Positions 579-61,523 of a stretch of 64,000 bases of DNA are shown piece after piece (positions within the stretch are counted from its first letter, which is position 1; every line of letters begins with the position of its first letter). Below the pieces are notes generated by a model, which saw nothing but the letters and a program-made list of their open reading frames with translations, did no database searches and had not been told where the DNA came from. A program made the translations under genes and the position numbers. Origin of the DNA: Octopus sinensis (Eukaryota). The stretch lies in NCBI RefSeq assembly GCF_006345805.1, contig NC_043016.1, positions 29,636,001 through 29,700,000 on the forward strand, read 5' to 3'.

Positions 579-1556
579 ATGGGCCCAAGACCTCGCATGA
601 CCTTGGAGAGACGGTACGAGGCTCTCTCGTGGCGTGGGAAGCTGTCGGAGGTTGCAATAGCCAGAAAACTTGGTGTAGCCAGGCGCACAATTCAGTGCTT
701 ATTTAAGAAATACGAGGAAACCGGATCAGCAGCTGACAAAAAGGGTAGGGGACGGAAGAGGCTGACGACCCAGCGGGAGACCGGATCATGATCCGAATGT
801 CACTGTACAACCGAAGGGCAACGACCCGGCAACTGGCGGAGGAGAGTGCAAAAGATGACAGGGAAGCAGTTGTCTACAACCACCGTCAAGACCAGATTAC
901 TGGAAGCTGGTCTAAAATCCTGTAGGCCGCCCCCAAAACCGGAAGAGGCGGCTGCTCTGGGCCCGTGCCCACAAGACATGGACCGTGCAGCAGTGGCGGA
1001 CAGATGTTTCACTGACGAGTCGCGATTCAGTCTCGTCAGTGACAAGCCTGTCCATGAGCGACGCCGCAGGGGTGAGCGCTTCAACAAAGACTGCATTGCT
1101 CCCACCATGAAGCATGGTGGGGGTGGTCTGATGGTGTGAGGGGCGTTCAGCTACAGTGGTGTTGGGCGGCTCTATGCCGTCGAAGGCAACATCAACGCAG
1201 CAAAGTACGTTGAGATAGTACGGGATACCTCTTTGGTGGCGAGGAGTACGTGCTCCAGCAGGACAACGCGCCTTCCCACACAGCCAAGCTCACCCGGTTC
1301 TTCAAGGAACCATGGGGTGACGGTCATGGACTGGCCTGGCCAGTCACCTGACCTGAACCCTATTGAGAACCTCTGGAGTCGATTGGGTAGGGATTTGAAT
1401 GTGCAGCAATACAGGAACCGACACGAGCTGTTTGGGGCACTTCTTGTTGCATGGGGGGGGCCATCCCCTTCACAGTACCTGCAGGCACTCATAGACAGCA
1501 TGCCGACCCGCGTAGCAGCTGTCATTGCTGCCAAAGGAGGAGCAACAAGATATTGA
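579..1556 (+). pseudogene. Tc1 transposase pseudogene (several frameshifts, one W-to-stop)
   Basis: HTH-like N-terminus (VAIARKLGVARRTIQCLFKKYEETGS..GRGRKR), RKRRLLWARAHKTWT in a shifted frame, FTDESRF (first D), KHGGGGLMV*G, QQDNAP (second D), WPGQSPDLNPIENLW (E), C-terminal AVIAAKGGATRY. 100 nt separate the second D and E codons, i.e. DD34E with a 2-nt deletion. Confidence 0.93.
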
Positions 1557-6044: not shown

Positions 6045-6838
6045 TGAGGTGTTATCAAAAAGTTCCTGGATTAAAATAAGCTATGTTTAATAAAACAACT
6101 TATTTACCTCCTCTGAAATAGTCACTTTGTGTAACAATGCACTAATCCCAGTGTTCCTACCACTTTTAGACTCTAGCCTTGAAGTCATTTTCTGTAAGCG
6201 CATTAAGAACCTTCTGCAAGTTGCTCTGGATTTCAACAATGGTGTTAAAACAGTGACCTTTGAGCTGCATTTTCATGGGGAAGAAAGGAAACTCTGCAGG
6301 TGCTAAATAGGGGGGATGCAGAAGTAATATCATGTTGTTTTTGGTGATAAAACTCACAAGTGAGGAGAGCTTGGTAGAGAATCCATTTCTTTGCGCTCCA
6401 TAGATCTGGTCGCTTTTGTCAAGTGTTCTCCGTTAAGTGCTTCAAAATGTTGCAGTAGAACTCTTGATTAATGGCTAGCCCCGGGGGATGAATTCTTAAT
6501 AACAATACCATATTTCTGGTGGTGATGCTTGTGGCAGGTTTTCTAGATTGCTCATCATCTTCCGAGGATGTTCTTCTGCTTTTGAAGTGCCCATGTCACT
6601 CAAAACATTGCGTATGACCCATTGCTTTGTTGCCATAAGCTTTCTGAGGCATGCTCAATGTCTCTGTAGCAGATTTCCCAAAAACACAAATTTCACAACT
6701 TGCAAAGTAAACACAGTGATGTTGTTCAGAACACTAGAGCATAAAGGTCACTGCTAGGTCTCACTGGACTCGCAACTGTGTGCTGCCATCTGTTGGTGTG
6801 CTACAAAACTAGTCCAGGAACATTTTGAAACCACCTCG
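6045..6838 (-). mobile_element. Mariner element, internally deleted (794 bp), TA-flanked
   Basis: TA|TGAGGTGTTATCAAAAAGTTCCTGGAT ... GTCCAGGAACATTTTGAAACCACCTCG|TA. Minus-strand ORF 6166-6357 LLHPPYLAPAEFPFFPMKMQLKGHCFNT is a decayed HPPYSPDLAP motif. Confidence 0.9.
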
Positions 6839-17039: not shown

Positions 17040-17470
17040 TTGTTACTAAAATCTCTCAAACTTTTTTTTTATCCAAAGCAGTGGAGCGCCAGAAACAGTA
17101 TTGTACTTTGTAATATACACAGTTATAATCCTGTGTGTTACGAGTTCATATTCCACAAGTGTTGATCAAATAAGAACCAATCTGTAACTGGGGTGGATTC
17201 CTATCACAATAACATACCACCTATTAAGGAAGTCCTCAGTGGGTTGTTTGTTGACCTTTTAGAGCAAAGAAAGAAATGGTTTCCTTTTGACAGCTGTTAT
17301 AGCATTGCTAATGTAATATCATTTCTGGTTGTGTGGGGCAGGCATGGTAGGAAGAACACTCTTTCAGGTATTCACTATGTTACTACAAGAGTTTGATTTG
17401 TGATAATGAGCCATTTTTTTTTTTCTTTTCTTTTCTAATATTTATATTGTTAATATTTTATCTGTTGCAG

Positions 17471-17554
17471 GCCGTAAGGAGTTAGCAATAGAATTCTACA
17501 GGAAAGGTATCACTGAACTTGAAAAAGGTATTTCGGTTGATGTTAACGGCCAAG
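17471..17554 (+). CDS. SPAST: Spastin exon (MIT domain): (G)[27 protein letters not shown](G)
   Basis: Polypyrimidine tract and TTGCAG acceptor, CAAG|GTAAAT donor, 84 nt, phase 1-1. Resembles vertebrate spastin [28 protein letters not shown]. Confidence 0.95.
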
Positions 17555-18104
17555 GTAAATAAAAATACATTTTTCAGTTTTAATTAGTCATTGTTTCACT
17601 TTAAGACTGGTGTAAAATCACTTTGTTTTAGTTATCAGCATTTACTATTTTCCATATTGACACGCATGCACACACACACACACACAATCTCAAGCACACA
17701 CCCACCTGCATACATCATCACCATCATTGTTTAACGTCCGCTTTCCATGCTAGCATAGGTTGGACGATTTGACTGAGGGCTGGCGAACCAGATGGCTGCA
17801 CCTGGCTTCAGTCTTGATCTGGTAGAGTTTCTACAGCTGGATGGCCTTTGTAACGCCAGGATGCCCTTTCTAACACCATATATACTTTTGATTCTGATTC
17901 TTGTTTCAATTTTTGTACTAGTTATGCTTAGGCATTGACATAATGGGTCTGCAATCAGCTATATTGAGCTCCTTGTTTATATGCATTGACCATTGTAAAA
18001 AAAAAGTGAAAGTAAATTGTGATACAAATTGGAATTGACAGTGTTGACCTTCCATAATTTTTTGTAAACAATGCATGTGACATAACCAATATGAAGAACA
18101 TATA

Positions 18105-19366
18105 CAGATAGTATCAAAAAGTTTCTGGACTAGCTATGCTTAATAAAAAGTAACTTATCTAAGTTTTAACATCATCTTCTTCGAAATAGTCATCTTGCAC
18201 AGCAATACGTTGGTCCTGCCATTTTTGGAACCTGGCCTGGCCTGGCAGTTGTTTTCTGCAAGCGAGTAGAGGAGCTTCTGTGATTCGCTCTGGGTATTGA
18301 CAACTGTGTTAAAATGGCGACCTTTGAGCTGCATTTTCATCTTGGGGAAAAGATGGAAGTTGACAGGTGCCAAATCTGGCAAATTGAGTAGGTGCAGAAG
18401 CAGTGCCCTGTTGTTTTTGGTGAGAACCTTGCAAGTGAAGAGAACTTGGTGATGGTTGTCATGAAGAATTCAATTCTTTGTGCTCCAAAGATCCAGTTGT
18501 TTTCACTGAAAGTCCTCCCTCAGATACTTCAAAACATTGCAGTAGAACTCTCAATTGACAGTTTGGTCCCAGAGGACAAATTCTCAATGCACAATACCAT
18601 AAATGTTGAAAAAAAAAAAAACAATGAACATTTTCTTGATTGAGCTGCGGCTCTGTTGTGCCTTCTTCAGTTGTGGAAATGAAGGGCTCTTCCATTGTTA
18701 TGACTGTTACTTCATTTCAAGAACATACCCATAGACCCAACTCTCGTCCCTGGTGATGATCCTCAATTATGAAGGACTGATCATCATCAGCAGCATGCTT
18801 ACAGAGATCTTGACAGACTTTGACATGGTGTTCTTTCTGTTCAGCAATCAGCAGGTGGGGGACAAACTTGGCAGACCCATAAGACAAACCAACAACATTA
18901 GCAATGTCATTGATTGTCCTCTGATGATCTTCATGCACAAGCTGATGAATTTTTACCACATTTCCAGGAATGACAATTGTGGCAGGTCTTCCAGATCACT
19001 CATTGTCTTCTAGGGACATTCTTCTGCTCTTGAAGTGCTTATGCCACTTGAAACATTGAGTACAGCCCATTGCCTTGTTGCTATAAGCTTTCTGAAAGCA
19101 TGTTCAATGTCTCTGTAGTAGACTTCCCAAGATTAATGCAAAATTTCATGTTGGCTCGTTGTTCCTGTGTATGAAGAAATTTCTGGCTACAGCATACACG
19201 TGATCACAAAAACACAAATTTCAATAATTGCAAAGTAAACGCAGCAATGTCACTCAGCACACTGCTTCATGAAGGTCACTGCTAGTTGTCACTGCACATG
19301 CACTTGTGTGCTGCCATCTGTTGGCGCACTACAAAACTAGTCCGGAAATTTTTTTATACCACCTCA
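18105..19366 (-). mobile_element. Mariner element, near full length (~1.26 kb), decayed, TA-flanked
   Basis: TA|CAGATAGTATCAAAAAGTTTCTGGACTAG ... CTAGTCCGGAAATTTTTTTATACCACCTCA|TA. Minus-strand fragments VHEDHQRTINDIANVVGLSYGS, AKFVPHLLIAEQKEHHVKVCQDL and PDLAPVNFHLFPKMKMQLKGRHF. Same family as 6045-6838. Confidence 0.92.
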
Positions 19367-26316: not shown

Positions 26317-27167
26317 TCCTTTCTACTGAGGTTCAACACCTGAAATTTTTTAGAGGTGGATACTAGTCAATTTACATCAACTTCAGTGTTCAACTGATAG
26401 TTATTTCATTGATTCTAAGAGAATGACAGGCAGAGCTGACCTCAGCAGAATTTGAACTTAGAATGTAAAAATGGATGAAATGCCGCTAAGCATTTTGTCT
26501 GGCATGCTAATGATTTTGTCACCTCACCACCTTTATTATATTCATTTAATATAAGCTATACATAAACAAGGTGACAGAAATATTGATATGCAAGAGGCCT
26601 TACAGTATATACTTTGTTCCTTCAGGTTCTCAGTTCAAATTTTAATGAAGTCAACTTGGGGCCTTCCATGCTTCATGGTTAATATTTCAGTGTTTTTTCT
26701 AAGTTCCATCCTTTTGACCATGTTCATGCTGGGGGAGATTTGTTTAGATAATATCATTAACTCCAGATCATACCTATGTTTGTAAATGCTTCAGCTGTGA
26801 CCATCCTGTGTTCTCAGACATCCTCCTTCACTGTATTCTTTTTAAAGATTATAGAATGTAATTTGAAAGATTTAGCATATATCATGAGAGACTTCCTCTT
26901 TAGTTTCCTACTGATTGAATCCGTCACTGTAGTATATTGGAGTGGATTCAGGTGAGTTCAAATTCCGCCGAGGTCGACTTTGCCTTTCATCCTTTCGGGG
27001 TCGATAAATTAAGTACCAGTTACGCACTGGGGTCGATGTAATCGACATAATACCTATGTCTGTCCTTGTTTGTCCCCTCTATGTTTAGCCCCTTGTGGGT
27101 AGTAAAGAAATATGTATTTCTTTCCAAATATATAAAAAAAATTTACCTTGTGTCATGTCAAAGATAA

Positions 27168-40765: not shown

Positions 40766-42473
40766 GTAGAGCAACAGCCATTCTTCATCCCTCAACTCAT
40801 ATATCGCTACCTCACATTATTATTATTATTATTATTATGCCATGTTGTTAGACACAGAATCATATATGCATGTTATTGACAAGTTTGACATTCACTTTTG
40901 GTGGAACCATAAATGTTTTATGTTGTTGGTGGTGGTAAATAAATATCTCGGATCAGGATTGTTCCAATGTCTCAAAGGATCTTTTATTGGCTATTGATCT
41001 TTCATTTATTACTACAGAAAGAATATGGGAATCAGACTTTTTTTTTTTATCTAGCTATTTTATGATATGAGAGTATAGTTGAGGGGTGGGGTAATTGACA
41101 TAGATACAAGGACACAAATTTTGGGGGAAGTGGGTTTGTCATTTAACCTTTAGCATGCTATAGATGCATCATGTTGCCGTACTGATTGTCTCCCTTCTCA
41201 ATGTAACACAATGTGCTTACAGCTGCAAGGGAGAAAAGTCGTACAACACCATGTTGCGCCTAAGCATGCTGAGGTTAAATTGATCCCAGTAGGTAACAGG
41301 TATTTTTATTTTATCAACCCTGGAAGGTATAAATGTCAAAGCCAATTTTGGCAGTGTTTAAAGTTAGAACATAAGTTCTGCTTCAATTGCATATGCTGGA
41401 TATTTAATCAACTAGGCAGCTATTTGCAACATCAGTGAATGTTTTACTCTCTTTTTCCTATATCAGAAATGATGAATTCTCATTTAATTATGTGGTTGGC
41501 TGTGAGTATGCACCATTGAAAAGGTCCAAAAAGGTTGAAATGTCTAGTATTCTTATTGGCCTCTGCTGAGATATATTTTTTGTCACTCTGCATGATATTT
41601 ATTCTGTTCTTGATGCGGCAAGTCCATAACAGATCTCAAGATAAAAACTGCAGTAACTATTGAGTATGTGTGTGTACATTAAGTATAATAAATAGATGGA
41701 TATTTTAATTAAATACTTCATCAATGGCCTATACCATATATCATGGTGTAAGCTAATGCTATAAGATATTTTGATCAATGCTCTAATAATTCTGCCAATC
41801 AATAATAATAATAATAATAACAATAATGATAATTTTGTGCTTTAGCACCAGATCAGAAATTTGTGTGTTTTTGTGTGTTGGGGGTGGATGGACAGACAAT
41901 TACATTGATTCTCATACTTTATTTTATTGACCTCAGAAGGAGAATGAATGGTAAAGTTAATCTTTGTAGGATTTGAACTAAGAATGTAAAGAGTTGGAAT
42001 GAGTGCTACGCTCATTCTGTTCAATATTCTAATGCTTCTATTAATCCCCTACTCACTCCGCTGATGTTGTTGTTGTTGTTGTTCTTCTTCTTATTATTAT
42101 TATCATTATTATAAAGGGGTGAGCTGGCAAAATTGTTAGCACACTGCACAAAATGCTTAGTGGCATTTCATCCATCTTTATGGTCCCAAGTTCAAATTCT
42201 GCCAACATCAACTTTGGCTGTCATCCTTAGATGAAATTGATGTAATTGTCTGTTTCCCTCCCACAAATTTCTGGTCTGGTGTCAATGTACAAAATTAATT
42301 AATCTTATTGATTCACAGAATTATTAGAGCATTGGTCAAAATATTTTTTTAGCATTAGGCCATGGAGGCAGTGTTTAAGGGTTGATAAAATAAGTACCAG
42401 TTGAGCACTAAGGTCAATGTAGCCAACTTACTCTCATGCCTGAATTTGCTGGCCTTGTGCCAAAATTTGAAAC

Positions 42474-42526
<53 letters not shown>

Positions 42527-42540
42527 TTATTATTATTATT

Positions 42541-42940
42541 CGGTGATACCAGTGCTGGTGGCACATAAGAGAACCATCCGAATGTGGCCATTGCCAGTGC
42601 TGCCCCGACTGGCTTCTGTGCCGGTGGCACGTAAAAAGCACCATCCGATCGTGGCCGTTGCCAGCCTCGCCTGGCCTCCGTGCCGGTGGCACGTAAAAAG
42701 CACCATCCGATTGTGGCCGTTTGTCAGCCTCGTCTGGCACCTGTGCCGGTGGCACGTAAAAAGCTCCCACTACACTCATGGAGTGGTTGGCGTTAGGAAG
42801 GGCATCCAGCCGTAGAAACATTGCCAGATCAGACTGGGCCTGGTGCAGCCTTCTGGCTTCCCAGATCCCAGTTGCACTGTCCAACCCATGCCAGCATGGA
42901 AAGCGGACTCTAAACGATGGTGATGATGATGATGATGATT
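42541..42940 (+). mobile_element. SINE family 3 (internal ~62-bp VNTR, GGAAGGGCATCCAGCCGTAGAAA motif, (GAT)n tail), 3 VNTR units
   Basis: Ends CCAACCCATGCCAGCATGGAAAGCGGAC..(GAT)n. Related copies at 43170-43680, 44637-44847, 46370-46680 (-), 17715-17870 (-), 50880-51300 (-), 58900-59105, 60380-60590 and 62080-62240. Confidence 0.85.
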
Positions 42941-43169
42941 ATTGTTATTATTATTGACAGAATTGTTAGCATGCTGGACGAAATGCTTAGCAGTATTTCA
43001 CCTGTTGCTGTGTTCTGAGTTCAAATTCTGCTGATGTTGACTTTACCTTTCATCCTTTAGGTTGAACACTGGGGTCAATGTAATTGACTCACCCTCCACC
43101 CCCACCCGCCCTAAATTGCTGCCCTTGTGCCAAAATTTGAAAGCATTATTATTATTATTATTATTTGTG

Positions 43170-43680
43170 GTACCAGTGCCGGTGGCACACAAGAAAACCA
43201 TCCGATCGTGGCCGTTCGCCAGCCTCATCTGGCACCTGTGTCGGTGGCACATAAAAACACCATCCGAGCGTGGCCATCTGCCAGCCTCGTCTGGCACCTG
43301 TGTCGGTGGCACATAAAAAACACCATCCGAGCGTGTCCGTTCGCCAGCCTCGTCTGGCACCTGTGTCGGTGGCACATAAAAACACCATCCGAGCGTGGCC
43401 GTTCGCCAGCCTCGTCTGGCACCTGTGTCGGTGGCACATAAAAACACCATCCGAGCGTGGTCGTTCGCCAGCTTCGTCTGGCACCTGTGTCGGTGGCACA
43501 TAAAATCACCCACTACACTCTCGGAGTGGTTGGCGTTAGGAAGGGCATCCAGCTGTAGAAACACTGCCAGATCTGACTGGCCTGGTGCAGCCTTCGGGCT
43601 CCCCAGACCCCAGTTGAACCGTCCAACCCATGCTAGCATGGAAAACGGACGCTAAATGATGATGATGATGATGACGATGA
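43170..43680 (+). mobile_element. SINE family 3 with five tandem ~62-bp internal units
   Basis: CATCCGAGCGTGGCCGTTCGCCAGCCTCGTCTGGCACCTGTGTCGGTGGCACATAAAAACAC units start at about 43199, 43261, 43324, 43386 and 43448. Confidence 0.88.
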
Positions 43681-44143
43681 TCAGGAGCAAGGGAAGTAGA
43701 TTGGCAGAATTGTTAAAGTGTTGAACAAAATGCTTTACAACATAAAGTTGCATTACACAATATTCTGAGTTCAAACCCAGTTTTCATTTTCACCCCTTTG
43801 GAGTTGAAATAAAAAATAAAGTACCAATCAAATACTGAGGTTGATCAACTAACCCCCTCCTCTCAAAATTGATGGACTTGTGCCTAAATCAGAAGCAATC
43901 ATTATTGTTATTTATCATTAATTATTATCATTAAGGTGGCAAACTGGCAGAATTGTTAGCAATGCCAAACAAAATGCTCAGTGGCACTTCTTCTGGGTTT
44001 ATGTTCTAAGGTCACCCTTATCTTTCATCCTTTTCGAGTCGATAAAATAGGTACCAGTTCAGCTCTGGGGATGATATAATTGACTAGTTCCCTTCCTACA
44101 AAGCTTCCAGTCTTTGTACCTATAGTAGAAATTATTATTGTTA

Positions 44144-44178
<35 letters not shown>

Positions 44179-44587
44179 GTTATTTAAGGTGGCAAGCTGG
44201 CAATATCGTTAGCACACCGGGCGAAATGCTTAGCAGTATTTCGACCATTGCTACATTCTTAGTACAAATTCTGCCGAGGTCAAGTTTGCCTTTCATCCTT
44301 TCAGGGTTGATAAATTAAGTACCAGTGAAACATAGGGATCAGTGTAATTGACTCGTCCCCATCCCTAAATTTCAGGCCCTGTGCCTTCAGTAGAAAGCAT
44401 TATTATTATTTTACCCATATTTATGTTCTGAGTTCAAATTCTGCAGAGGCTGACTTTGCCTTTCATCCTCTTGAGGGTCAATAAAATTAAGTACCAGTCG
44501 AGTAATGGGGTAAATATAATCAACTAGTCCCCTCCCTCAAAATTTCAGGCCTTGTGCCTTTAGTAAAAAGCATTATTATTATTTTTA

Positions 44588-44636
<49 letters not shown>

Positions 44637-45579
44637 CTCCGTCTGGCACCTGTGCGGGTGGCATGTAAAAAGCATCCACTACACTCACGGAGTGGTAGGC
44701 ATTAGGAAGGGCATCCAGCCGTAGAAACACTGCCAGATCAGACTGGGCCTGATGCAGCCTTCTGGCTTCACAGACCCCAGTTGAACCGTCCAACCCATGC
44801 TAGCATGGAAAGCGGACGCTAAATGATGATGATGATGATGATGATGATCTTCATCAGCATTGTTGTCTTGCTGGATAATGTATCGGTGAATTTGTTTACC
44901 GTCTGAGACCTAACATTTTCATCAGTTTCTCCTGGCAATTTCTATCAGTTTAATTAGCTCTTGCAAAGTAAAGTATAATTTGGTATTGTTCTTAGCACAA
45001 TACGGAAATGATTATTGAATTACCGAACAAGTATTAGATTTTACTAAGCGTTATGTATTTATATACATATCCAATTACATATATGATCATCTTCATCATC
45101 ATCATCACCCTCGTCATATGTCCATGTTCCATGCTGGCATGTGTTGATATGATCTGTTGGGGTCTAAGGACTGCACTGAGCTCAGTGTGTATTTTGCTTT
45201 GGTTTCTACGGCTGGATGCCCTTCCTAATACCAACTACCCTACAATGCAGTGTGTACTAGGTGTTTTTGACTTGAGACTGGCACTGTTGAGGTCATTATG
45301 CAGCTTTTGAGACAACAAACCCCAAGGGTTGCTTATTGCACACACACACACACCACACACACACACACACACATGGTGGACTCTTCCTTTGAAGATAACA
45401 TATGAGTATTCAGCTTTTGCAGAACAACTTGCACAAATGATTTGTTTATGGTGATCAAATGTTTGTGCCTGAACAGGTGCACAGTGTGCCATGTGTCAGG
45501 TGTTGAAGTGATTGCAGAGCAATGTAAAATTCCTAGACCATCTGGTCTAGGAATTGAAATCATGATCTAACCACTAAGC

Positions 45580-45617
<38 letters not shown>

Positions 45618-45629
45618 ATAGAGAGTATG

Positions 45630-45862
45630 TAAGGCGGTGAGCTGGCAGACACGTTAGCGTGCCGGGCGATGTGCTTAGCGGTATTTCATCTGTCGTTACG
45701 TTCTGAGTTCAAATCCCGCCGAGGTCAACTTTGCCTTTCATCCTTTCGGGGTCGATAAATAAAGTACCAGTTTCGCACTGGGGTCGATATAATCGACTCA
45801 ATCCCTTCGTCTGTCCTTGTTTGTCCCCTCTATGTTTAGCCCCTTGTGGGTAGTAAAGAAAT
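45630..45862 (+). mobile_element. Young SINE family 2 copy with 17-bp TSD
   Basis: ACATAATAGAGAGTATG at 45613-45629 and 45863-45879. Confidence 0.9.
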
Positions 45863-46187
45863 ACATAATAGAGAGTATGGAGACTTGTGCATTCACAAAA
45901 TTTATTTTATAGTTATATACAGCATGTTACAATGACCTAGATGTGTTTCCGCTGCAGCGGCTACTCACTGTTGCAAATGCAACCTTGCAATATTGTCAGT
46001 GCAGTAGTTGAATGAATTATCTTAGTATGGATAATTCGGTTAACCGATACCTGGGTAGCAAATTCACATCAGAAAAACACGGTTGAAGCTACATGCCAAG
46101 GGCAGAGATCACATGCTTTCGTGTGGAAATTTGTGTGTTTTTTTAATACAAATAAATGAAAGAATGGAGTTGAACAACGATTTAACA

Positions 46188-46292
46188 AAATTCCTTTATT
46201 CTCGACATATGTTTCGAAGGCTGCATATTCCTAATTTCGAAGGAATAAGGGGTGCATTATGCCGCCTTCTCATCAGGAAAAACAAGGAATTT
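46188..46292 (-). ncRNA. Type I hammerhead ribozyme (self-cleaving RNA motif)
   Basis: Minus strand: AAAUUCCUUGUUUUUC-CUGAUGA-GAAGGC...GCCUUC-GAAAC-AUAU-GUC^-GAGAAUAAAGGAAUUU. All core nucleotides are present. Stem I has 14 of 16 pairs (one G-U, 2x2 internal loop); stem II is 6 bp plus an extension; stem III is the palindrome ACAUAUGU. Predicted cleavage between 46204 and 46203. Confidence 0.85.
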
Positions 46293-46678
46293 ATGTCAGC
46301 ATCAAGATGAACAAAAACTTTTAGATGACTGCCCACACAGAGCCCATAGCGATAATATACACACATATCATCATCATCATCATCGTTTAACGTCCGTTCT
46401 CCATGCTAGCATGGGTTGGACGGTTCGACTGGGGATCTGGGAAGCCAGAAGGCTGCACCAGGCTCCAGTCTTATCTGGCAGTGTTTCTACAGCTGGATGC
46501 CCTTCCTAACGCCAACCACTCCGTGAGTGTAGTGGGTGCTTTTTACGTGCCACCTGCACAGGTGCCAGGCGAGGCTGGCAACGGCCACGGTCGGATTGGT
46601 GTATTTTATGTGCCACCGGCACGGAAGCCAGACGAGGCGGTGCTGGCATCGGCCACGAGTCGGATGGTGCTTTTTACG

Positions 46679-46895
46679 TGATATCAGTGATTCTGAGGTA
46701 TGCTTTTGGCGACATACAAAGTGTTGTCAAATTCCATTTTCGAACAAGTGGTGGACTATTCAATCGTCAGTGTTTCAAAGCCAGAACTCTGATACACACC
46801 AGTATTATTTGTGATCTACTTGTTGCAGATGATGCTGCACTAGTAGTGAGCTCCTTAGAGAAAGCTCAGGAATTTTTAAACTGGTTTTCTGTTGC
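46679..46895 (+). mobile_element. RTE/BovB-like reverse transcriptase fragment
   Basis: ISVILRYAFGDIQSVVKFHFRTSGGLFNRQCFKART..ICDLLVADDAALVVSSLEKAQEFLNWFSVA resembles the BovB-type R(T/S)DGxLFNL..DLLFADD segment. Abutted by SINEs on both sides. Confidence 0.75.
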
Positions 46896-47000
46896 ATGAT
46901 GGAAGTAATCCACCAACCAGTCGATTTGCTCGACTAAAGGCGGTGCTCCAGCATGGCCGCAGTCAAATGACTGAAACAAGTAAAAGAAAAAAAATGAGTG

Positions 47001-54115: not shown

Positions 54116-54273
54116 TTGCAACAAAACCATTAAAGCCATCCAAAAATCAATTACTAGTGCATAAAAGCAACACGTTACCTCGAACTAGAAGTACATCAAC
54201 TTCAACCCTGCGAGAAAGTCCAACTTTATCACCTAAAAAACAGGTTCACAAACGACAGTTATCACAACCTGAT
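54116..54273 (+). CDS. SPAST: Spastin exon (basic Ser/Thr-rich linker, probable microtubule-binding region): (V)ATKPLKPSKNQLLVHKSNTLPRTRSTSTSTLRESPTLSPKKQVHKRQLSQPD
   Basis: TTTTAG acceptor, GAT|GTAAGT donor, 158 nt, phase 1-0. The SNTLPR motif resembles vertebrate SNSLPR. Confidence 0.88.
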
Positions 54274-54434
54274 GTAAGTTACTTTTTATTATTATTTCAT
54301 GTAGACAAAGTCAATATGATTGGAATTCTTTTTATGGCTACCATTGTTAAGGCAAAACAGTTTTGTTTTTATGCAATAAAAATTCTATATATTTTATCTG
54401 ATTTTATGGGTCTTAAATTTTTACATTTTTCTCA

Positions 54435-54851
54435 TACTCTTTTACTCTCTTTTACTCTTTTACTTGTTTCAGTCATTTGACTACGGCCATGCTGGAGCAC
54501 CGCCTTTAGTCGAGCAATTCGACCCTGGGACTTATTCTTTGTAAGCCCAGTACTTATTATATCGGTCCCTTTTGCCGAACCGCTAAGTGACGGGGACGTA
54601 AAACACACCAGCATCGGTTGTCAAGCAATGTTGGTGGGGGGACAAACATAGACACACAAACACACACACACACACACATATATATACATATATACGACAG
54701 GCTTCTTTCAGTTTCCGTCTACCAAATCCACTCACAAGGCATTGGTCGGCCCGGGGCTATAGTAGAAGACACTTGCCCAAGATGCCACGCAGTGGGATTG
54801 AACCCGGAACCATGTGGTTGGTTAGCAAGCTACTTACCACACAGCCACTCC
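54435..54851 (-). mobile_element. SINE family 1, intact antisense copy
   Basis: Inverted relative to 52739-53142; about 160 bp downstream of the exon donor at 54273. Confidence 0.9.
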
Positions 54852-55488
54852 AAATGAGTAGTACATGTATTTCAAAGGGCCAATCGTGTCACACTCAGTG
54901 TCATGCTGAATCTCCCCGAGAACTACATTAAGGGTACAATTCTCCACAGTGTCTGTGGAGTGCTCAGCCACTTCCATGTTGATTTCATGCGCAGGCTGTT
55001 CCATTGATCAGATCGACTGGAACCCTCTTCGTCATAACCGACAGAGTGACAGTAAATTAAGTTAGAAAAAATAAACAAATATTTTCTCTAAAACGCCTGT
55101 AATGTTATGTCTTTTAACCTTTTAGCATTCAGATTACTCTGTCAGATGTAATGCTTATTTATTCACATTGTTTTCAATTGATCATGCATTATCTCATAGC
55201 TTTGAGATTTCAATGATGTGATTGTTTTTAGAATATTTTTGTTTTTTTGCAGAGTAGGTGTGAAAGGCCTGTTTGAACATAAAACAGATAGAATATTTGG
55301 GCTGGATACGGCCAGTTTAAATGCTAAAGGATTAATACAAATTTAAAAGTAACATTATCTAGTATTCTCCTGTTGTCCAGTTCTCACTGTATTCTTTGAT
55401 ATATATTCAGGAGTGTCAAGGAATTTTAGAGGAATAAATATGTTTTAGAAAATTGGTATGAGATCTTATTAAAACTGTTTTCTTTCAG

Positions 55489-55615
55489 ATGAAAAGCTCT
55501 CCGAAAAAAGAAAAACAGTTACCTGCTAGTTTTAAAAACGTTGACAAAAAATTGGCTAACCTCATTTTAAATGAGATTGTTGATTCGGGCCCACCGGTTG
55601 CATTTAATGATGTTG
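55489..55615 (+). CDS. SPAST: Spastin exon: MKSSPKKEKQLPASFKNVDKKLANLILNEIVDSGPPVAFNDV
   Basis: TTTTCTTTCAG acceptor, GTTG|GTAAGT donor, 127 nt, phase 0-1. Conserved KNVDxxLAxLIxNEIVD motif preceding the AAA domain. Confidence 0.96.
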
Positions 55616-57169
55616 GTAAGTTTCATATTTATTTTATTTCATTTCTACTAATCTTAATAAGTGACATATTGATATATATATATATATATCGCCATGATAG
55701 ATCGCTAGCCACTACACATTCTTTATTTTCTTTCTGTGAAAGAGCGTAGGCTCGAAACATTAAAGACTTTTTCACTTCCCAAGCATCTGTTTGTTGTCTA
55801 CACCACCTGTCTTTGTCTTTTGTTTTTTTTTGTGAATTCTACCTATATATATATATATATATATATACAATACACACACACACACATACATACACACACA
55901 CTGAGTTTTATAATTGTCATATTGATATATATATATATATATTGATATGAGTTGCCAGTAGACTTAATTGTTTCCTGTATTGATACTATAATTTGGACCA
56001 TTACAGGGTTCCTTTATCAGGATCCACTCTAATACAAACATCCAGATTATATTTCTGATATAAGGATAAATTTTTATCTCAACCCATTGCTTCCTAATGT
56101 GTCTACTCCTACCTGTGTCTACTCATGATTTGTGGCACCTTCTTCCTTTTCCCCTACTGTCTCAGAAATCCTGCAAAAATGGTTTGTCTTGGACATTGTC
56201 TGCCTTCCTCTGTATAAGTCATAAAAGAAGCAGCAGCAGAGACTTGGAATATTTTATCACAGAGAAAATAGTCATACATTTTAAATTAATGGCAAATAAA
56301 TCAAAAAATGGATGCAGAAAAGGTATCAGGTCTTATGCCAACAAAGATCAATTATAAAGCTTTTATATTTCTTATGGTATATGTGAGAAAAGTTTCCACA
56401 AATTTAGAATTGTTTGAACATATTTTCTCCCAAAACAAGTTATTCTTATCCCCAAAACTACTGAACCAGAAACAGAGCTTGTAGATATTTTGCACATCTT
56501 CCTCATTCCATGTCATTCCTTTCCTACCTTTATACTAACAAGTCAGATTTTTATAGATGTGAGGTTTGCAGATATGACAAGGGTGTGAGAATTTGATACC
56601 ATTGTATATAGAATCTTTTGTACTCTAGACACAAGTCCTGAAATTTTGGGGGATGAGGAGGCAGTCGATTAGATCGACCCCAGTACACAACGGGTACTTA
56701 ATTTATCAACTCTGAAAGGATGAAAAGCAAAGTTGAACTCAGCAGAATTTGAACTCGGAACATAAAGACAGATGAAATACCACTAAGCATTTTGCCTGGT
56801 GTGCTAATGTTTCTGTCAGCTTGCCACCTTACATTGTATATAGAATACATCATCAACGATGCTTGTATTGGAAATGGGACATTACTGTATACATAATGAT
56901 GATGATTATATTGATGTTGACAACAGCTTCTTTCATCATCATTATAATTTCAGTGTTTGCTTTTCCATGCTCACTTGAGTTGGATGGGATTTGTTGAGGC
57001 AGATTTTCTATGGCTGGATACCCTTCCTGTTTCCAAGCAAAGTAAAATTTCCTCATAGACAGACACGTTTTTTTCATGGAAGACTGGAAATGGACACCAC
57101 ATGCATAATGGTGATATTCATTTACAACTATCATGTTCGGTCAAGGAATGGAGGCAGCAAAACATACAA

Positions 57170-58380
57170 CACACACACACACACACACACACTCTCTCTC
57201 TCTTTCTCTCTCTCACTCAACTCGCCACTCTCACATACACACACGCACACACACACTCTCTCTCTCTTTCTCTTGCTCTCTCACTCACTCCACCTCACAA
57301 TACACACACACGCACACACACACTCTCCTCGTCTCCCTTTCTCTCTCACTCACGCACTCTCACATACCACACACGCACACACACCACTCTCTCTCTCTTT
57401 CTCTCTCACTCACTCGCACTCTCACATACACACACGCACACACACACTCTCTCTCTCTTTCTCTCTCACTCACTCGCACTCTCACATACACACACGCACA
57501 CACACACTCTCTCTCTCTTTCTCTCTCACTCACTCGCACTCTCACATACACACACGCACACACACACTCTCTCTCTCTTTCTCTCTCACTCACTCGCACT
57601 CTCACATACACACACGCACACACACACTCTCTCTCTCTTTCTCTCTCACTCACTCGCACTCTCACATACACCCACAACGCACACACACACTCTCTCTTCT
57701 TTCTCTCTCACTCACTCGCACTCACATACACACACACGCACACACAAAATCTCTCTCTCTTTCTCTCTCACTCACTCGCACTTTCACATACACACACGCA
57801 CACCACACACTCCCTCGCTCTCCTCTTTCTCCTCACTCACTCGCACTCTCACTACACACACGCAACACCACACTCTCTCTCCTCTCTTCTCTCTCACTCA
57901 CTCGCACTCTCACATACACACACGCACACACACACTCTCTCTCCTTTCTCTCTCTCACTCACTCGCACTCCACTCTCACATACACACGCACACACACACT
58001 CTCTCTCTCGCTTTCTCTCTCACTCACTCGCACTCTCACATACACACACGCACACCACACTCTCTCTCACTCTCTCTCTCTCTCTCTCTCACTCACTCGC
58101 ACTCTCACATACACACACGCACACACACACTCTCTCTCTCTTTCTCTCTCACTCACTCGCACTCTCACATACACACAACGCAACACACACACTCTCTCTC
58201 TCTTTCTCTCACTCACTCTCACCTCTCTCGCACATACACACACGCACACACACACTCTCTCTCTCTTTCTCTCTCTCACTCACTCGCTCTCTCACTCAAT
58301 ACACACACACACACACACACTCTCTCTCTCTTTCTCTCTCACTCACTCGCACTCTCACATACACACACGCACACACACAC
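57170..58380. repeat. 60-bp CT/CA composite minisatellite, about 20 units
   Basis: Unit CTCACATACACACACGCACACACACACTCTCTCTCTCTTTCTCTCTCACTCACTCGCACT is identical four times at 57421-57660; flanking units are degenerate with small indels. Confidence 0.95.
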
Positions 58381-58427
58381 TTACGCATGTGCGTGTTTGT
58401 GTGTATGTCTCTGTGTATGTATGTATC

Positions 58428-58513
<86 letters not shown>

Positions 58514-59160
58514 TATATACATACATTCTGCAGAGTGGTTGGTGTTAAGAAGGGCATCCAGCTGTAGAATCCTTACCAAAACAGACACAGTAGCCTAAGG
58601 TAAATTTTCTACCTGGCCAACTCCTGTCATCCATCCTACTCATGCATGCATGGAAGATGGACATTAATCGATGATGATCCCCTCTCTCTCTTTCGGAGAG
58701 GCACTGAGCAGCTATACGCACACATACACACACGGCAGTAACTTCCACCTACCGAATTCAACCACAAAGCTCCGGTCGGCTCGGGGCTATAGTGGAAGAC
58801 ACGTACCCAAAGTGCCACGCAGCGGGACTGAACCCGAAACCATGTAGCTAGGAACCCCCCCACATACACATACATAAAGGATCTTCACTTTGCAAGTTAC
58901 TTGATGACCCTGCCAGTGCTGGTGCTGTGTAAAAAGTATTATGTTCACTCTGTAAAGTGGTTGGCATTAGGAAGTGCATCCAGCCATAAAAACCCTACCA
59001 AAAACATGCAGTAGAGCCTGGTGCTGGCCTCTGGCTTGCCAGCTTCTGTCTAACAGCCCAACCCATGCCAGCATGGAAAACGAATGTCAAATGATTATGA
59101 TGATGATTGAGAGATTGATATACACATGACAGGTTTCAGTTTTCCTCCTTTCAAATCCAA

Positions 59161-59604: not shown

Positions 59605-59669
59605 CTGGACAACAAATTGCTAAACAAGCCCTGCAAGAAATTGTTATTTTACCTTCCCTGCGACCTGAG
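59605..59669 (+). CDS. SPAST: Spastin exon: (A)[21 protein letters not shown]
   Basis: TTTTTAG acceptor, GAG|GTAATT donor, 65 nt, phase 1-0. Near-identical to vertebrate [22 protein letters not shown]. Confidence 0.97.

Positions 59670-61421: not shown

Positions 61422-61523
<102 letters not shown>

What the first reader, a model, noticed from the sequence alone, without database searches (positions are those of the whole stretch)
46188..46292. Intact-looking hammerhead ribozyme with an unusual extended stem II, antisense within a spastin intron
Seen (minus strand): stem I AAAUUCCUUGUUUUUC/GAGAAUAAAGGAAUUU (14 of 16 pairs, UG/UA internal loop); core CUGAUGA; stem II GAAGGC/GCCUUC, G-A mismatch, GCA/UGC, a 12-nt bulge UAAUGCACCCCU, then a 7-bp hairpin UAUUCCU-UCGAAAUU-AGGAAUA; GAAAC; palindromic stem III ACAUAUGU; GUC cleavage triplet; AAUAAA 3 nt after the cut (plus-strand TTTATT at 46195-46200). 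Known: type I hammerheads with palindromic stem III next to a poly(A) signal occur in Penelope-like pseudo-LTRs and retrozymes and can cleave as dimers. No Penelope RT or GIY-YIG ORF was seen in the window, and the host segment (about 45880-46345) matches no other repeat here. Inference: a solo pLTR or non-autonomous retrozyme-like element of a possibly undescribed cephalopod family, or a retained ribozyme that processes an antisense transcript. It cannot cut the sense spastin pre-mRNA.
Basis: partly seen in the sequence, partly recalled or inferred. Interest (0 to 1): 0.9.

Follow-up and report, generated by a model that had tools for sequence, protein, structure and literature searches.

The report
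Lone hammerhead ribozyme in octopus intron
A complete-looking copy of the well-known self-cutting "hammerhead" RNA motif sits, backwards, inside an intron of an octopus spastin gene; it is real rather than chance, but it is most likely a stray leftover of a mobile element, and its only unusual feature is an oversized second stem.

Summary
On the minus strand, 46292-46188 carries every conserved hammerhead core base (CUGAUGA, G10.1-C11.1, GAA, A15.1-U16.1, C17). Helix I has 14 of 16 pairs, helix II is 54 nt, and helix III is 2 bp plus a tetraloop within the palindrome ACAUAUGU. The predicted cut is between 46204 and 46203.

Rfam Hammerhead_1 matches end to end, but at 22.7 bits against a cut-off of 34, and only when a 121-nt stretch is searched. 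The loss is at a 50-nt insert in helix II. Chance is very unlikely: 4 of 300 shuffles gave a relaxed hit, and none had helix II of 6 bp or more.

The host is an Octopus spastin gene on the plus strand, with exons on both sides, so the motif is intronic and antisense. It is a single copy in the window, in 491 bp of unique DNA between two SINEs. I found no reverse transcriptase or GIY-YIG reading frame, no intact tandem partner and no relatives in any collection I could reach.

The best reading is a solo retroelement-derived type I hammerhead, of retrozyme-like or Penelope-like origin (unresolved). Alone it probably cuts poorly. No evidence supports a retained function. It is a new member of a known kind, of modest interest.

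The parts
46188..46292 (-). Complete type I hammerhead motif (105 nt)
   Evidence: Sequence. Fold. Descriptor scan against shuffles. Rfam Hammerhead_1 at 22.7 bits, E = 0.0011, full model length.
46277..46292 (-). Helix I, 5' strand AAAUUCCUUGUUUUUC. Five pairs next to the core, a 2x2 internal loop (GU opposite UA), then 9 distal pairs.
   Evidence: inverted repeat I1.
46270..46276 (-). Core box CUGAUGA (C3-A9)
46216..46269 (-). Extended helix II (54 nt). GAAGGC/GCCUUC with G10.1-C11.1, a G.A mismatch, 10 more pairs around a 12-nt bulge, and the loop UCGAAAUU. It also holds an inner copy of CCUUCGAAA (46243-46235), and its terminal hairpin arms repeat the distal helix I sequence AUUCCU/AGGAAU.
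   Evidence: (I2, I7, D2, I4-I6). Rfam alignment with an insert of 50 nt where the model has 10.
46205..46215 (-). Core box GAA (G12-A14) and helix III. Helix III is A15.1-U16.1 and C15.2-G16.2 with the loop AUAU, and lies within the palindrome ACAUAUGU.
   Evidence: Two copies co-fold with an 8-bp intermolecular helix III.
46203..46204 (-). Predicted self-cleavage site: after C17 (46204), before G1.1 (46203)
   Evidence: Inferred from hammerhead numbering applied to the sequence. Not tested experimentally.
46188..46203 (-). Helix I, 3' strand GAGAAUAAAGGAAUUU. Contains AAUAAA at 46200-46195.
45864..46354 (-). Host segment of 491 bp, unique in the window, GC 0.375
   Evidence: Self-BLAST. nhmmer. 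GC content.
46063..46082 (-). Possible relic of a second hammerhead 5' half. CCGUGUUUUU-CUGAUGUGAA matches CCUUGUUUUUCCUGAUGAGAA, with A9 changed to U. Its core box lies 205 nt downstream of the intact one. Inconclusive.
   Evidence: Local alignment. Second-best score among 845 overlapping 300-nt windows of the real sequence, with a fraction of 0.0036 scoring as high.
45934..45970 (-). Possible heavily decayed hammerhead-like site: UUGCAA-CAGUGAG-UAG-CCGC UGCA GCGG-AAAC-ACAUCUAG-GUC-A-UUGUAA. Probably not significant.
   Evidence: Found only with a very relaxed descriptor, which gives about 2 chance sites per shuffled window. No Rfam hit at E up to 10. Not found by my own model.
46355..46680 (-). 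Flanking SINE-like repeat. In minus-strand reading its (GAU)n tail abuts the host segment. A T5 run at about 46316-46312 lies between that tail and the ribozyme.
   Evidence: About 90% identity to copies at 42705-42933, 43449-43674 and 44640-44842. The reading frame 46391-46678 matches Octopus vulgaris hypothetical proteins at 88% identity.
45577..45863 (.). Flanking repeat on the other side, from a second SINE-like family
   Evidence: 93.8% identity to 26953-27112, and many other copies.
17470..17559 (+). Spastin MIT-domain exon upstream of the ribozyme (context)
   Evidence: phmmer against PDB: spastin 7s7j and 3eab, E = 4e-8.
54116..55616 (+). Two spastin exons downstream of the ribozyme, 54116-54273 and 55490-55616. 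Further exons lie at 59607-59669 and at about 61440-61511 (context).
   Evidence: Splice sites read. Joined translation matches spastin 6pek at E = 1.2e-45. Coordinates.

Best explanation
This is a genuine, structurally intact type I hammerhead ribozyme motif, present as a single copy in antisense orientation in an intron of an Octopus spastin gene. Most likely it is a stray remnant of a hammerhead-carrying retroelement. That element could be a retrozyme-like short repeat or a Penelope-like pseudo-LTR; the parent family is unresolved. Two SINE insertions later boxed it in.

If an antisense transcript crosses it, helices I and II would form and the RNA could cut itself after C17 (46204|46203), leaving a 2',3'-cyclic phosphate and a 5'-OH. 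Helix III is only 2 bp plus a tetraloop, and there is no second intact copy nearby to form the 8-bp double-hammerhead helix III. Cleavage by the lone copy is therefore expected to be weak.

The 54-nt helix II looks like a secondary insertion or partial self-duplication. It repeats CCUUCGAAA and the distal helix I arms.

Shown: the motif, its statistical non-randomness, the fold, the antisense intronic context, and single copy within the window.
Inferred: retroelement origin, weak activity as a monomer, and no role for spastin.
For: - Core and helices are complete.
- Rfam Hammerhead_1 aligns over its full length, E = 0.0011, and the only large departure from the model is the 50-nt insert in helix II.
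- A chance origin is very unlikely.
- Two copies co-fold with an 8-bp helix III. This matches the published behaviour of metazoan type I hammerheads with 1-2 bp helix III and palindromic loops, which cut poorly alone and better as dimers (PMC4209133, PMC7229834).
- The published surveys found that most such motifs in the genomes examined occur as single elements, probably from truncated Penelope-like elements (PMC4209133).
- Octopus genomes carry Penelope-like elements (PMC13282606), and the giant squid genome has 235 Hammerhead_1 hits (PMC6962438).
- The spastin exons are on the plus strand on both sides of the motif.
- The site sits between two SINE copies in AT-rich intron DNA.
- There is a possible relic of a second 5' half, its core box 205 nt downstream of the intact one, on the same strand.
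- The internal 9-nt repeat and the duplicated stem arms in helix II point to a secondary insertion.
Against: - No other copy of the 491-bp host segment or of this ribozyme variant was found: not in the window, in 81 kb of O. vulgaris sequence, in the predicted-protein collections searched through the two open frames across the motif, or in JGI metagenomes. Membership of a repeat family is therefore not demonstrated. These searches had little power, because no cephalopod genome could be searched by DNA.
- No reverse transcriptase, GIY-YIG domain, target-site duplication or element boundary was identified.
- All 15 core bases and all three helices are perfect while the surroundings look like old, SINE-riddled intron. 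That would also fit purifying selection.
- The long M1-M2 alignment that suggested a tandem duplicate was no better than alignments to control regions.
Confidence: 0.62

Rival explanations
1. It is specifically a solo pseudo-LTR fragment of a Penelope-like element, whose hammerhead normally lies at the junction between the pseudo-LTR and the reading frame.
For: - Helix II is large (6 bp or more), G10.1-C11.1 is present, and 15.2-16.2 and loop 3 are palindromic. All of these are listed for Penelope-type hammerheads (PMC4209133).
- Most such motifs occur singly, from truncated elements (PMC4209133).
- Penelope-like elements expanded in octopus genomes (PMC13282606).
- The AUG inside CUGAUGA opens a reading frame, as in the Anolis Poseidon element (PMC11167929). 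Here that frame stops after 25 codons.
Against: - The unpaired base between A9 and G10.1, described as conserved in Penelope minimal hammerheads, is absent.
- Helix I is long (5 + 9 bp with an internal loop) rather than 4-5 bp.
- Helix III is of the canonical 2 bp plus tetraloop type.
- No reverse transcriptase or GIY-YIG signal was found in frames of 45 aa or more between 41 and 48.8 kb.
- No second pseudo-LTR copy exists in the window.
Confidence: 0.25
2. It is the surviving unit of a decayed retrozyme-like tandem repeat. Retrozymes are short non-autonomous repeats whose flanking hammerheads release circular RNAs.
For: - Canonical-style helix I (5 bp, then an internal loop at the place of loop 1) and canonical helix III.
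- Low GC of 0.375.
- A same-strand relic resembling the 5' half, its core box 205 nt downstream of the intact one, and a very degenerate hammerhead-like site whose GUC lies 270 nt downstream. Both spacings fall within the published 170-400 nt unit size (PMC7229834).
Against: - No second intact hammerhead exists in the window.
- The unit-to-unit alignment is no better than alignments to control regions.
- The relaxed descriptor that finds the second site gives about 2 chance sites per window.
- Rfam sees nothing there at E up to 10.
Confidence: 0.3
3. It is an exapted, selectively maintained ribozyme that processes an antisense transcript of the spastin locus or otherwise acts in cis.
For: The core and all helices are flawless while the surrounding intron is full of decayed repeats. 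The extended helix II is itself well paired. Conserved intronic hammerheads are known in amniotes; this rests on my own knowledge of HH9 and HH10.
Against: There is no conservation, expression or cleavage evidence at all. The orientation is antisense to the only recognisable gene. Helix III is weak and has no partner. One intact copy among the many insertions of a family is expected without selection.
Confidence: 0.07
4. It is a chance resemblance in AT-rich intron DNA.
For: Relaxed hammerhead descriptors do give chance hits at genome scale: about 1e-7 per base and strand.
Against: None of 300 shuffles reached helix II of 6 bp or more. Adding G10.1-C11.1, the 9-bp distal helix I and the palindromic helix III gives about 0.001 expected sites per genome (rough). 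The Rfam model aligns end to end.
Confidence: 0.02

Closest known systems
Canonical metazoan type I hammerheads of non-LTR retrozymes and satellite repeats (mussel, coral, newt/axolotl, Schistosoma; Rfam Hammerhead_1 RF00163)
   Same: Open helix I. The complete conserved core. Helix I with about 5-6 pairs followed by an internal loop. Helix III of 2 bp plus a 4-nt palindromic loop that allows a double-hammerhead dimer. A low-GC host sequence.
   Different: Helix II is 54 nt, against about 4 bp plus a short loop (insert of 50 nt where the Rfam model has 10). No recognisable loop 1 / loop 2 contact. No intact tandem partner. Scores below the Rfam gathering cut-off (22.7 against 34 bits).
Minimal and variant hammerheads in pseudo-LTRs of Penelope-like elements (Cervera and de la Pena 2014)
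   Same: Enlarged helix II. G10.1-C11.1. Palindromic helix III region. Usually found as solitary copies. Expected to need dimerisation or helper factors.
   Different: No unpaired base between A9 and G10.1. A long helix I. A real 2-bp helix III. No linked reverse transcriptase / GIY-YIG reading frame or second pseudo-LTR in the window.
Conserved intronic hammerheads of amniotes (HH9, HH10)
   Same: A type I hammerhead lying in an intron of a protein-coding gene as an isolated copy.
   Different: As far as I recall, those lie in the sense strand and are conserved across species. This one is antisense, and its conservation is unknown.

Membership tests
Hammerhead ribozyme, type I | Conserved core bases C3 U4 G5 A6 N7 G8 A9, G12 A13 A14, A15.1-U16.1, and H17 (not G) | tested here: met
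   CUGAUGA at 46276-46270, GAA at 46215-46213, A15.1 at 46212, U16.1 at 46205, C17 at 46204.
Hammerhead ribozyme, type I | Three helices around the core, with helix I open-ended and G10.1-C11.1 closing helix II | tested here: met
   Helix I has 14 of 16 pairs, helix II has 6 + 10 pairs, helix III has 2 pairs.
Hammerhead ribozyme, type I | Score at or above the Rfam Hammerhead_1 gathering cut-off (a curated threshold, not a biological definition) | tested here: not met
   22.7 bits against 34, E = 0.0011, full-length alignment. The loss is at the 50-nt insert in helix II. No hit in the whole-window or 301-nt searches.
Hammerhead ribozyme, type I | Site-specific self-cleavage after position 17 | not testable with these tools
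   Needs in vitro transcription and cleavage of monomer and dimer constructs.
Hammerhead ribozyme, type I | Helix I / helix II tertiary contact that gives fast cleavage at physiological Mg2+ | tested here: inconclusive
   Helix I has an internal loop 5 bp from the core. Helix II has a G.A mismatch after 6 bp and a 12-nt bulge. No canonical loop 2 is present. Whether these elements touch cannot be judged from sequence.
Metazoan non-LTR retrozymes | Short tandem repeats (about 170-400 bp) with a type I hammerhead in each unit | tested here: not met
   There is only one intact hammerhead in 64 kb. The downstream relics at 46082-46063 and 45970-45934 are weak. The unit-to-unit alignment is not above controls.
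Metazoan non-LTR retrozymes | Low GC content (below 45-50%) | tested here: met
   GC is 0.375 in 45864-46354, the same as the window average of 0.374. The feature is therefore uninformative here.
Metazoan non-LTR retrozymes | Expression as linear and circular unit-length RNAs | not testable with these tools
   No RNA data are available.
Penelope-like element pseudo-LTR hammerheads | Location in a direct repeat flanking a reverse transcriptase / GIY-YIG reading frame | tested here: not met
   No Pfam family at E up to 0.05 in frames of 45 aa or more between about 41 and 48.8 kb. No second copy of the host segment. Sensitivity to decayed frames is limited.
Penelope-like element pseudo-LTR hammerheads | Unpaired base between positions 9 and 10.1 | tested here: not met
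   A9 is followed directly by G10.1, which pairs with C11.1.
Penelope-like element pseudo-LTR hammerheads | Enlarged helix II, G10.1-C11.1, and a palindromic 15.2-16.2 / loop 3 | tested here: met
   Helix II has 6 bp before the first mismatch. ACAUAUGU is a perfect palindrome.
Conserved intronic hammerheads (HH9/HH10 type) | Conservation at the orthologous intron position across species | not testable with these tools
   No orthologous cephalopod spastin intron could be fetched. The only related locus (L001/L002) shares exons only.

The most novel reading that the evidence does not exclude
The ribozyme is not junk. In this reading it is a maintained antisense self-cleaving RNA in the octopus spastin intron. 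Its oversized helix II, built from a partial copy of the ribozyme's own 3' half and distal helix I, would act as a new tertiary contact or as a conformational switch between two alternative 3' halves. A second, minimal-type fold using the inner CCUUCGAAA copy is geometrically possible.
Probability: 0.05. Interest if true: 0.7.

Novelty: new member of a known kind. Interest (0 to 1): 0.3.

Why it matters
If the motif cuts, it adds a cephalopod example with a helix II far longer than the Rfam model allows. It also shows that routine Rfam annotation, with gathering cut-offs and speed filters, misses such variants. Hammerhead counts in cephalopod genomes may therefore be underestimates. The self-derived insert in helix II is a small case study of how these ribozymes tolerate insertions. 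There is no indication that it matters for spastin.

Tried and rejected
1. Rfam scans of the whole window and of a 301-nt stretch gave no hammerhead hit. Only the 121-nt search did.

2. I used the two open reading frames across the motif to look for relatives among predicted proteins.
   - The minus-strand 56-aa frame gave nothing.
   - The plus-strand 75-aa frame hit one protein, P0002, with 19 stretches. It turned out to be a 64-nt satellite in a metagenome contig, with no hammerhead core and no Rfam hit. I rejected it as spurious.

3. Exact look-ups of four window reading frames found nothing. This genome does not appear to be in the gene index.

4. A search with the spastin exons returned only a distant Logan contig, which shares nothing but an exon with the window. 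No orthologous intron was obtained.

5. The metagenome pattern CTGATGAG-N30-60-CGAAACATATGTC gave 3 hits from one unrelated family with no hammerhead helices.

6. In 81 kb of O. vulgaris sequence reached through SINE-derived proteins there was no copy of the host segment and no hammerhead.

7. Hits of my single-sequence covariance model in those loci were microsatellites or hairpins.

8. The tandem-unit hypothesis did not survive its controls. The long M1-M2 alignment (z about 2.3) was matched or beaten by alignments to unrelated control regions and to the reverse complement, so I rejected it as evidence.

9. Pfam found no reverse transcriptase or GIY-YIG domain near the site.

Full report
**What is there.** Read on the minus strand, 46292-46188 is: AAAUUCCUUGUUUUUC | CUGAUGA | GAAGGC-G-GCAUA-AUGCACCCCUUA-UUCCU-UCGAAAUU-AGGAA-UAUGC-A-GCCUUC | GAA | A-C-AUAU-G-U | C / GAGAAUAAAGGAAUUU. 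In standard hammerhead numbering every conserved position is present.
- C3-A9 lie at 46276-46270.
- G10.1-C11.1 closes helix II.
- G12-A14 lie at 46215-46213.
- A15.1 (46212) pairs with U16.1 (46205).
- C17 is at 46204, so the predicted cut is between 46204 and 46203.
- Helix I has 5 pairs next to the core, a 2x2 internal loop, and 9 more pairs.
- Helix III is only A-U and C-G plus AUAU, and lies within the 8-nt palindrome ACAUAUGU.
- AAUAAA lies at 46200-46195.

Both use the same number of pairs.

**Is it more than chance?**
- The 105-nt RNA folds at -30.5 kcal/mol, with z = -3.77 and 0 of 200 shuffles as stable. Helices I and II are in the minimum-energy structure.
- The exact hammerhead structure costs only 2.2 kcal/mol more, and the helices persist when 300 nt of context are folded.
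- A descriptor requiring CUGANGA, helix I of 5 or more pairs, helix II of 4 or more, GAAA, a helix III and UH finds only this site in the window. It hits in 4 of 300 dinucleotide-preserving shuffles, and never with helix II of 6 or more.
- That relaxed rate would still give hundreds of chance sites in a 2.7-Gb genome. Adding the features actually present (G10.1-C11.1, two more helix II pairs, nine distal helix I pairs, the palindromic loop) brings the expectation to roughly 0.001 per genome. This is my rough estimate and assumes the features are independent.
- Rfam gave nothing at gathering thresholds on the whole window, and nothing at E up to 10 on 301 nt. On 121 nt, Hammerhead_1 (RF00163) aligned over its whole length (positions 1-45) to 46282-46198 at 22.7 bits, E = 0.0011. 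The only major departure is a 50-nt insert in helix II where the model has 10. That score is below the curated cut-off of 34, so routine annotation would miss this site.

**Context.** Spastin exons lie on the plus strand on both sides of the site.
- An MIT-domain exon is at 17470-17559 (spastin 7s7j and 3eab, E = 4e-8).
- Downstream exons are at 54116-54273, 55490-55616, 59607-59669 and about 61440-61511. Joined, they match spastin 6pek at E = 1.2e-45.

The ribozyme is therefore intronic and antisense, and it cannot cut the sense pre-mRNA.

The genome is an Octopus. The reading frame of the flanking SINE matches O. vulgaris hypothetical proteins at 88% identity, and 81 kb of O. vulgaris sequence share the window's SINE families at 86-94%.

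The ribozyme lies in 491 bp (45864-46354) that match nothing else in the window. Repeats flank it at 45577-45863 and 46355-46680.

Read on the minus strand, the upstream SINE ends in a (GAU)n tail. A U5 run follows about 20 nt before the ribozyme. By inference, read-through from the SINE's own promoter would probably stop short of it.

**Search for relatives and a parent element.**
- No second copy exists in the window by BLAST, nhmmer or a covariance model built from this sequence.
- No Pfam family appears in reading frames of 45 aa or more between about 41 and 48.8 kb.
- No cephalopod genome could be searched by DNA. As a substitute I used the two frames that are open across the motif. The minus frame found nothing. 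The plus frame found only P0002, a translated 64-nt satellite with no hammerhead core, which I rejected.
- A metagenome pattern scan gave three unrelated hits.
- The only spastin-related contigs retrieved share exons only.
- Four O. vulgaris loci hold no copy.

These negatives have little power. Copy number in the genome remains unknown.

**Internal anatomy of helix II.**
- CCUUCGAAA, which is the 3' strand of helix II plus GAAA, occurs twice, 23 nt apart (46220-46212 and 46243-46235).
- The arms of the terminal hairpin (UAUUCCU/AGGAAUA) repeat the distal helix I arms (AUUCCU/AGGAAU).
- A very relaxed scan even finds a minimal-type alternative fold that uses the inner copy, with helix I of 4 bp and helix II of 5 bp.

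By inference, the long helix II arose by partial self-duplication or insertion into an originally shorter helix II.

**Traces of a tandem partner.**
- At 46082-46063 on the same strand, CCGUGUUUUU-CUGAUGUGAA resembles the ribozyme's 5' half. Its core box lies 205 nt downstream of the intact one, and A9 is changed to U.
- Among 845 overlapping 300-nt windows of the real sequence on both strands, this is the second-best match to the ribozyme, with a fraction of 0.0036 scoring as high.
- A degenerate hammerhead-like arrangement at 45970-45934 is picked up only by a descriptor that yields about 2 chance sites per shuffled window. Neither Rfam nor my own model sees it.
- A long alignment between the two putative units (z about 2.3) was equalled by alignments to control regions and to the reverse complement, so it is not evidence.

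A decayed tandem array is possible but not shown.

**How it most likely works.**
- The published work shows that metazoan type I hammerheads with a 1-2 bp helix III and a palindromic loop cut poorly as single units. They cut efficiently when two copies pair through an extended helix III (PMC4209133, PMC7229834).
- Here two copies co-fold into exactly that structure, at -68.4 kcal/mol against 2 x -30.5, but the locus offers only one intact copy.
- Penelope-type hammerheads show low activity in vitro. In the Anolis Poseidon element they needed the element's protein, yet were dispensable for insertion in vitro (PMC4209133, PMC11167929).
- My best reading is a retroelement-derived solo hammerhead that is structurally competent but would cut weakly, and only in an antisense transcript.

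**Which parent family?**
- Canonical, retrozyme-type features: helix I with an internal loop after 5 bp; a 2 bp plus tetraloop helix III; no unpaired base between A9 and G10.1.
- Penelope-type features: a large helix II and solitary occurrence.
- The defining context of neither family is met in the window.

**Comparison and novelty.**
- Hammerheads of this type are abundant in animal genomes.
- Cephalopods are already known to have them: 235 Hammerhead_1 hits in the giant squid (PMC6962438).
- Octopus genomes carry Penelope-like elements (PMC13282606).

This is therefore a new member of a known kind. The 54-nt, partly self-derived helix II is an unusual variant feature that defeats routine Rfam annotation. 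A retained function is not excluded, since the motif is flawless in an otherwise decayed intron, but nothing supports it positively.

Noticed in passing
window 792-1553 (+): Remnant of a Tc1/mariner-type DNA transposon. The frame 1140-1553 matches Pfam DDE_3 (E = 1.8e-7) and the frame 792-1136 matches HTH_Tnp_Tc3_2 (E = 2.3e-4).
   Followed up: partly
window 46740-46896 (+): A reading frame with ...LVADDAALVVSSLEKAQEFLNWFSVA, which looks like the YXDD region of a LINE-type reverse transcriptase. It lies on the strand opposite to the ribozyme, just beyond the flanking SINE. Pfam gave no hit, so the identification is by eye only.
   Followed up: partly
window 6169-6432 (-) and 18158-18995 (-): Frames with ...LLLHPPYLAPAEFPFFPMKMQLKGH... 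and ...LLNLPDLAPVNFHLFPKMKMQLKGRHF..., which resemble the C-terminal part of mariner transposases. Pfam found nothing at E up to 0.01.
   Followed up: partly
window 42400-44850 and 46355-46680: A cluster of at least four copies of one SINE-like family with internal short tandem sub-repeats (about 62-63 nt periodic matches at 42576-43448). Its reading frames are annotated as hypothetical proteins in O. vulgaris.
   Followed up: partly
window 56979-58598 (+): About 1.6 kb is open in all three plus-strand frames (frames of 471-539 aa), made of simple repeats (TC/AC-rich, HTHTH/SLSLS translations). This is a long compound microsatellite inside the spastin intron, not a gene.
   Followed up: no
L003 10112-13638 (ENA metagenome contig ERZ25074789:ctg47345): A 64-nt satellite in 55 copies (97% matches) is annotated as a 1245-aa protein. 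It matched the query only through repetition of a YSRHM-like word. This shows how repeat-derived open frames can give very low E-values.
   Followed up: yes
window 46151-46177 and 46288-46314: An imperfect 27-nt direct repeat (70% identity, ending in TGAACAA) brackets the ribozyme, with start-to-start spacing of 137 nt. It could be a chance match or a trace of an insertion or duplication boundary.
   Followed up: no
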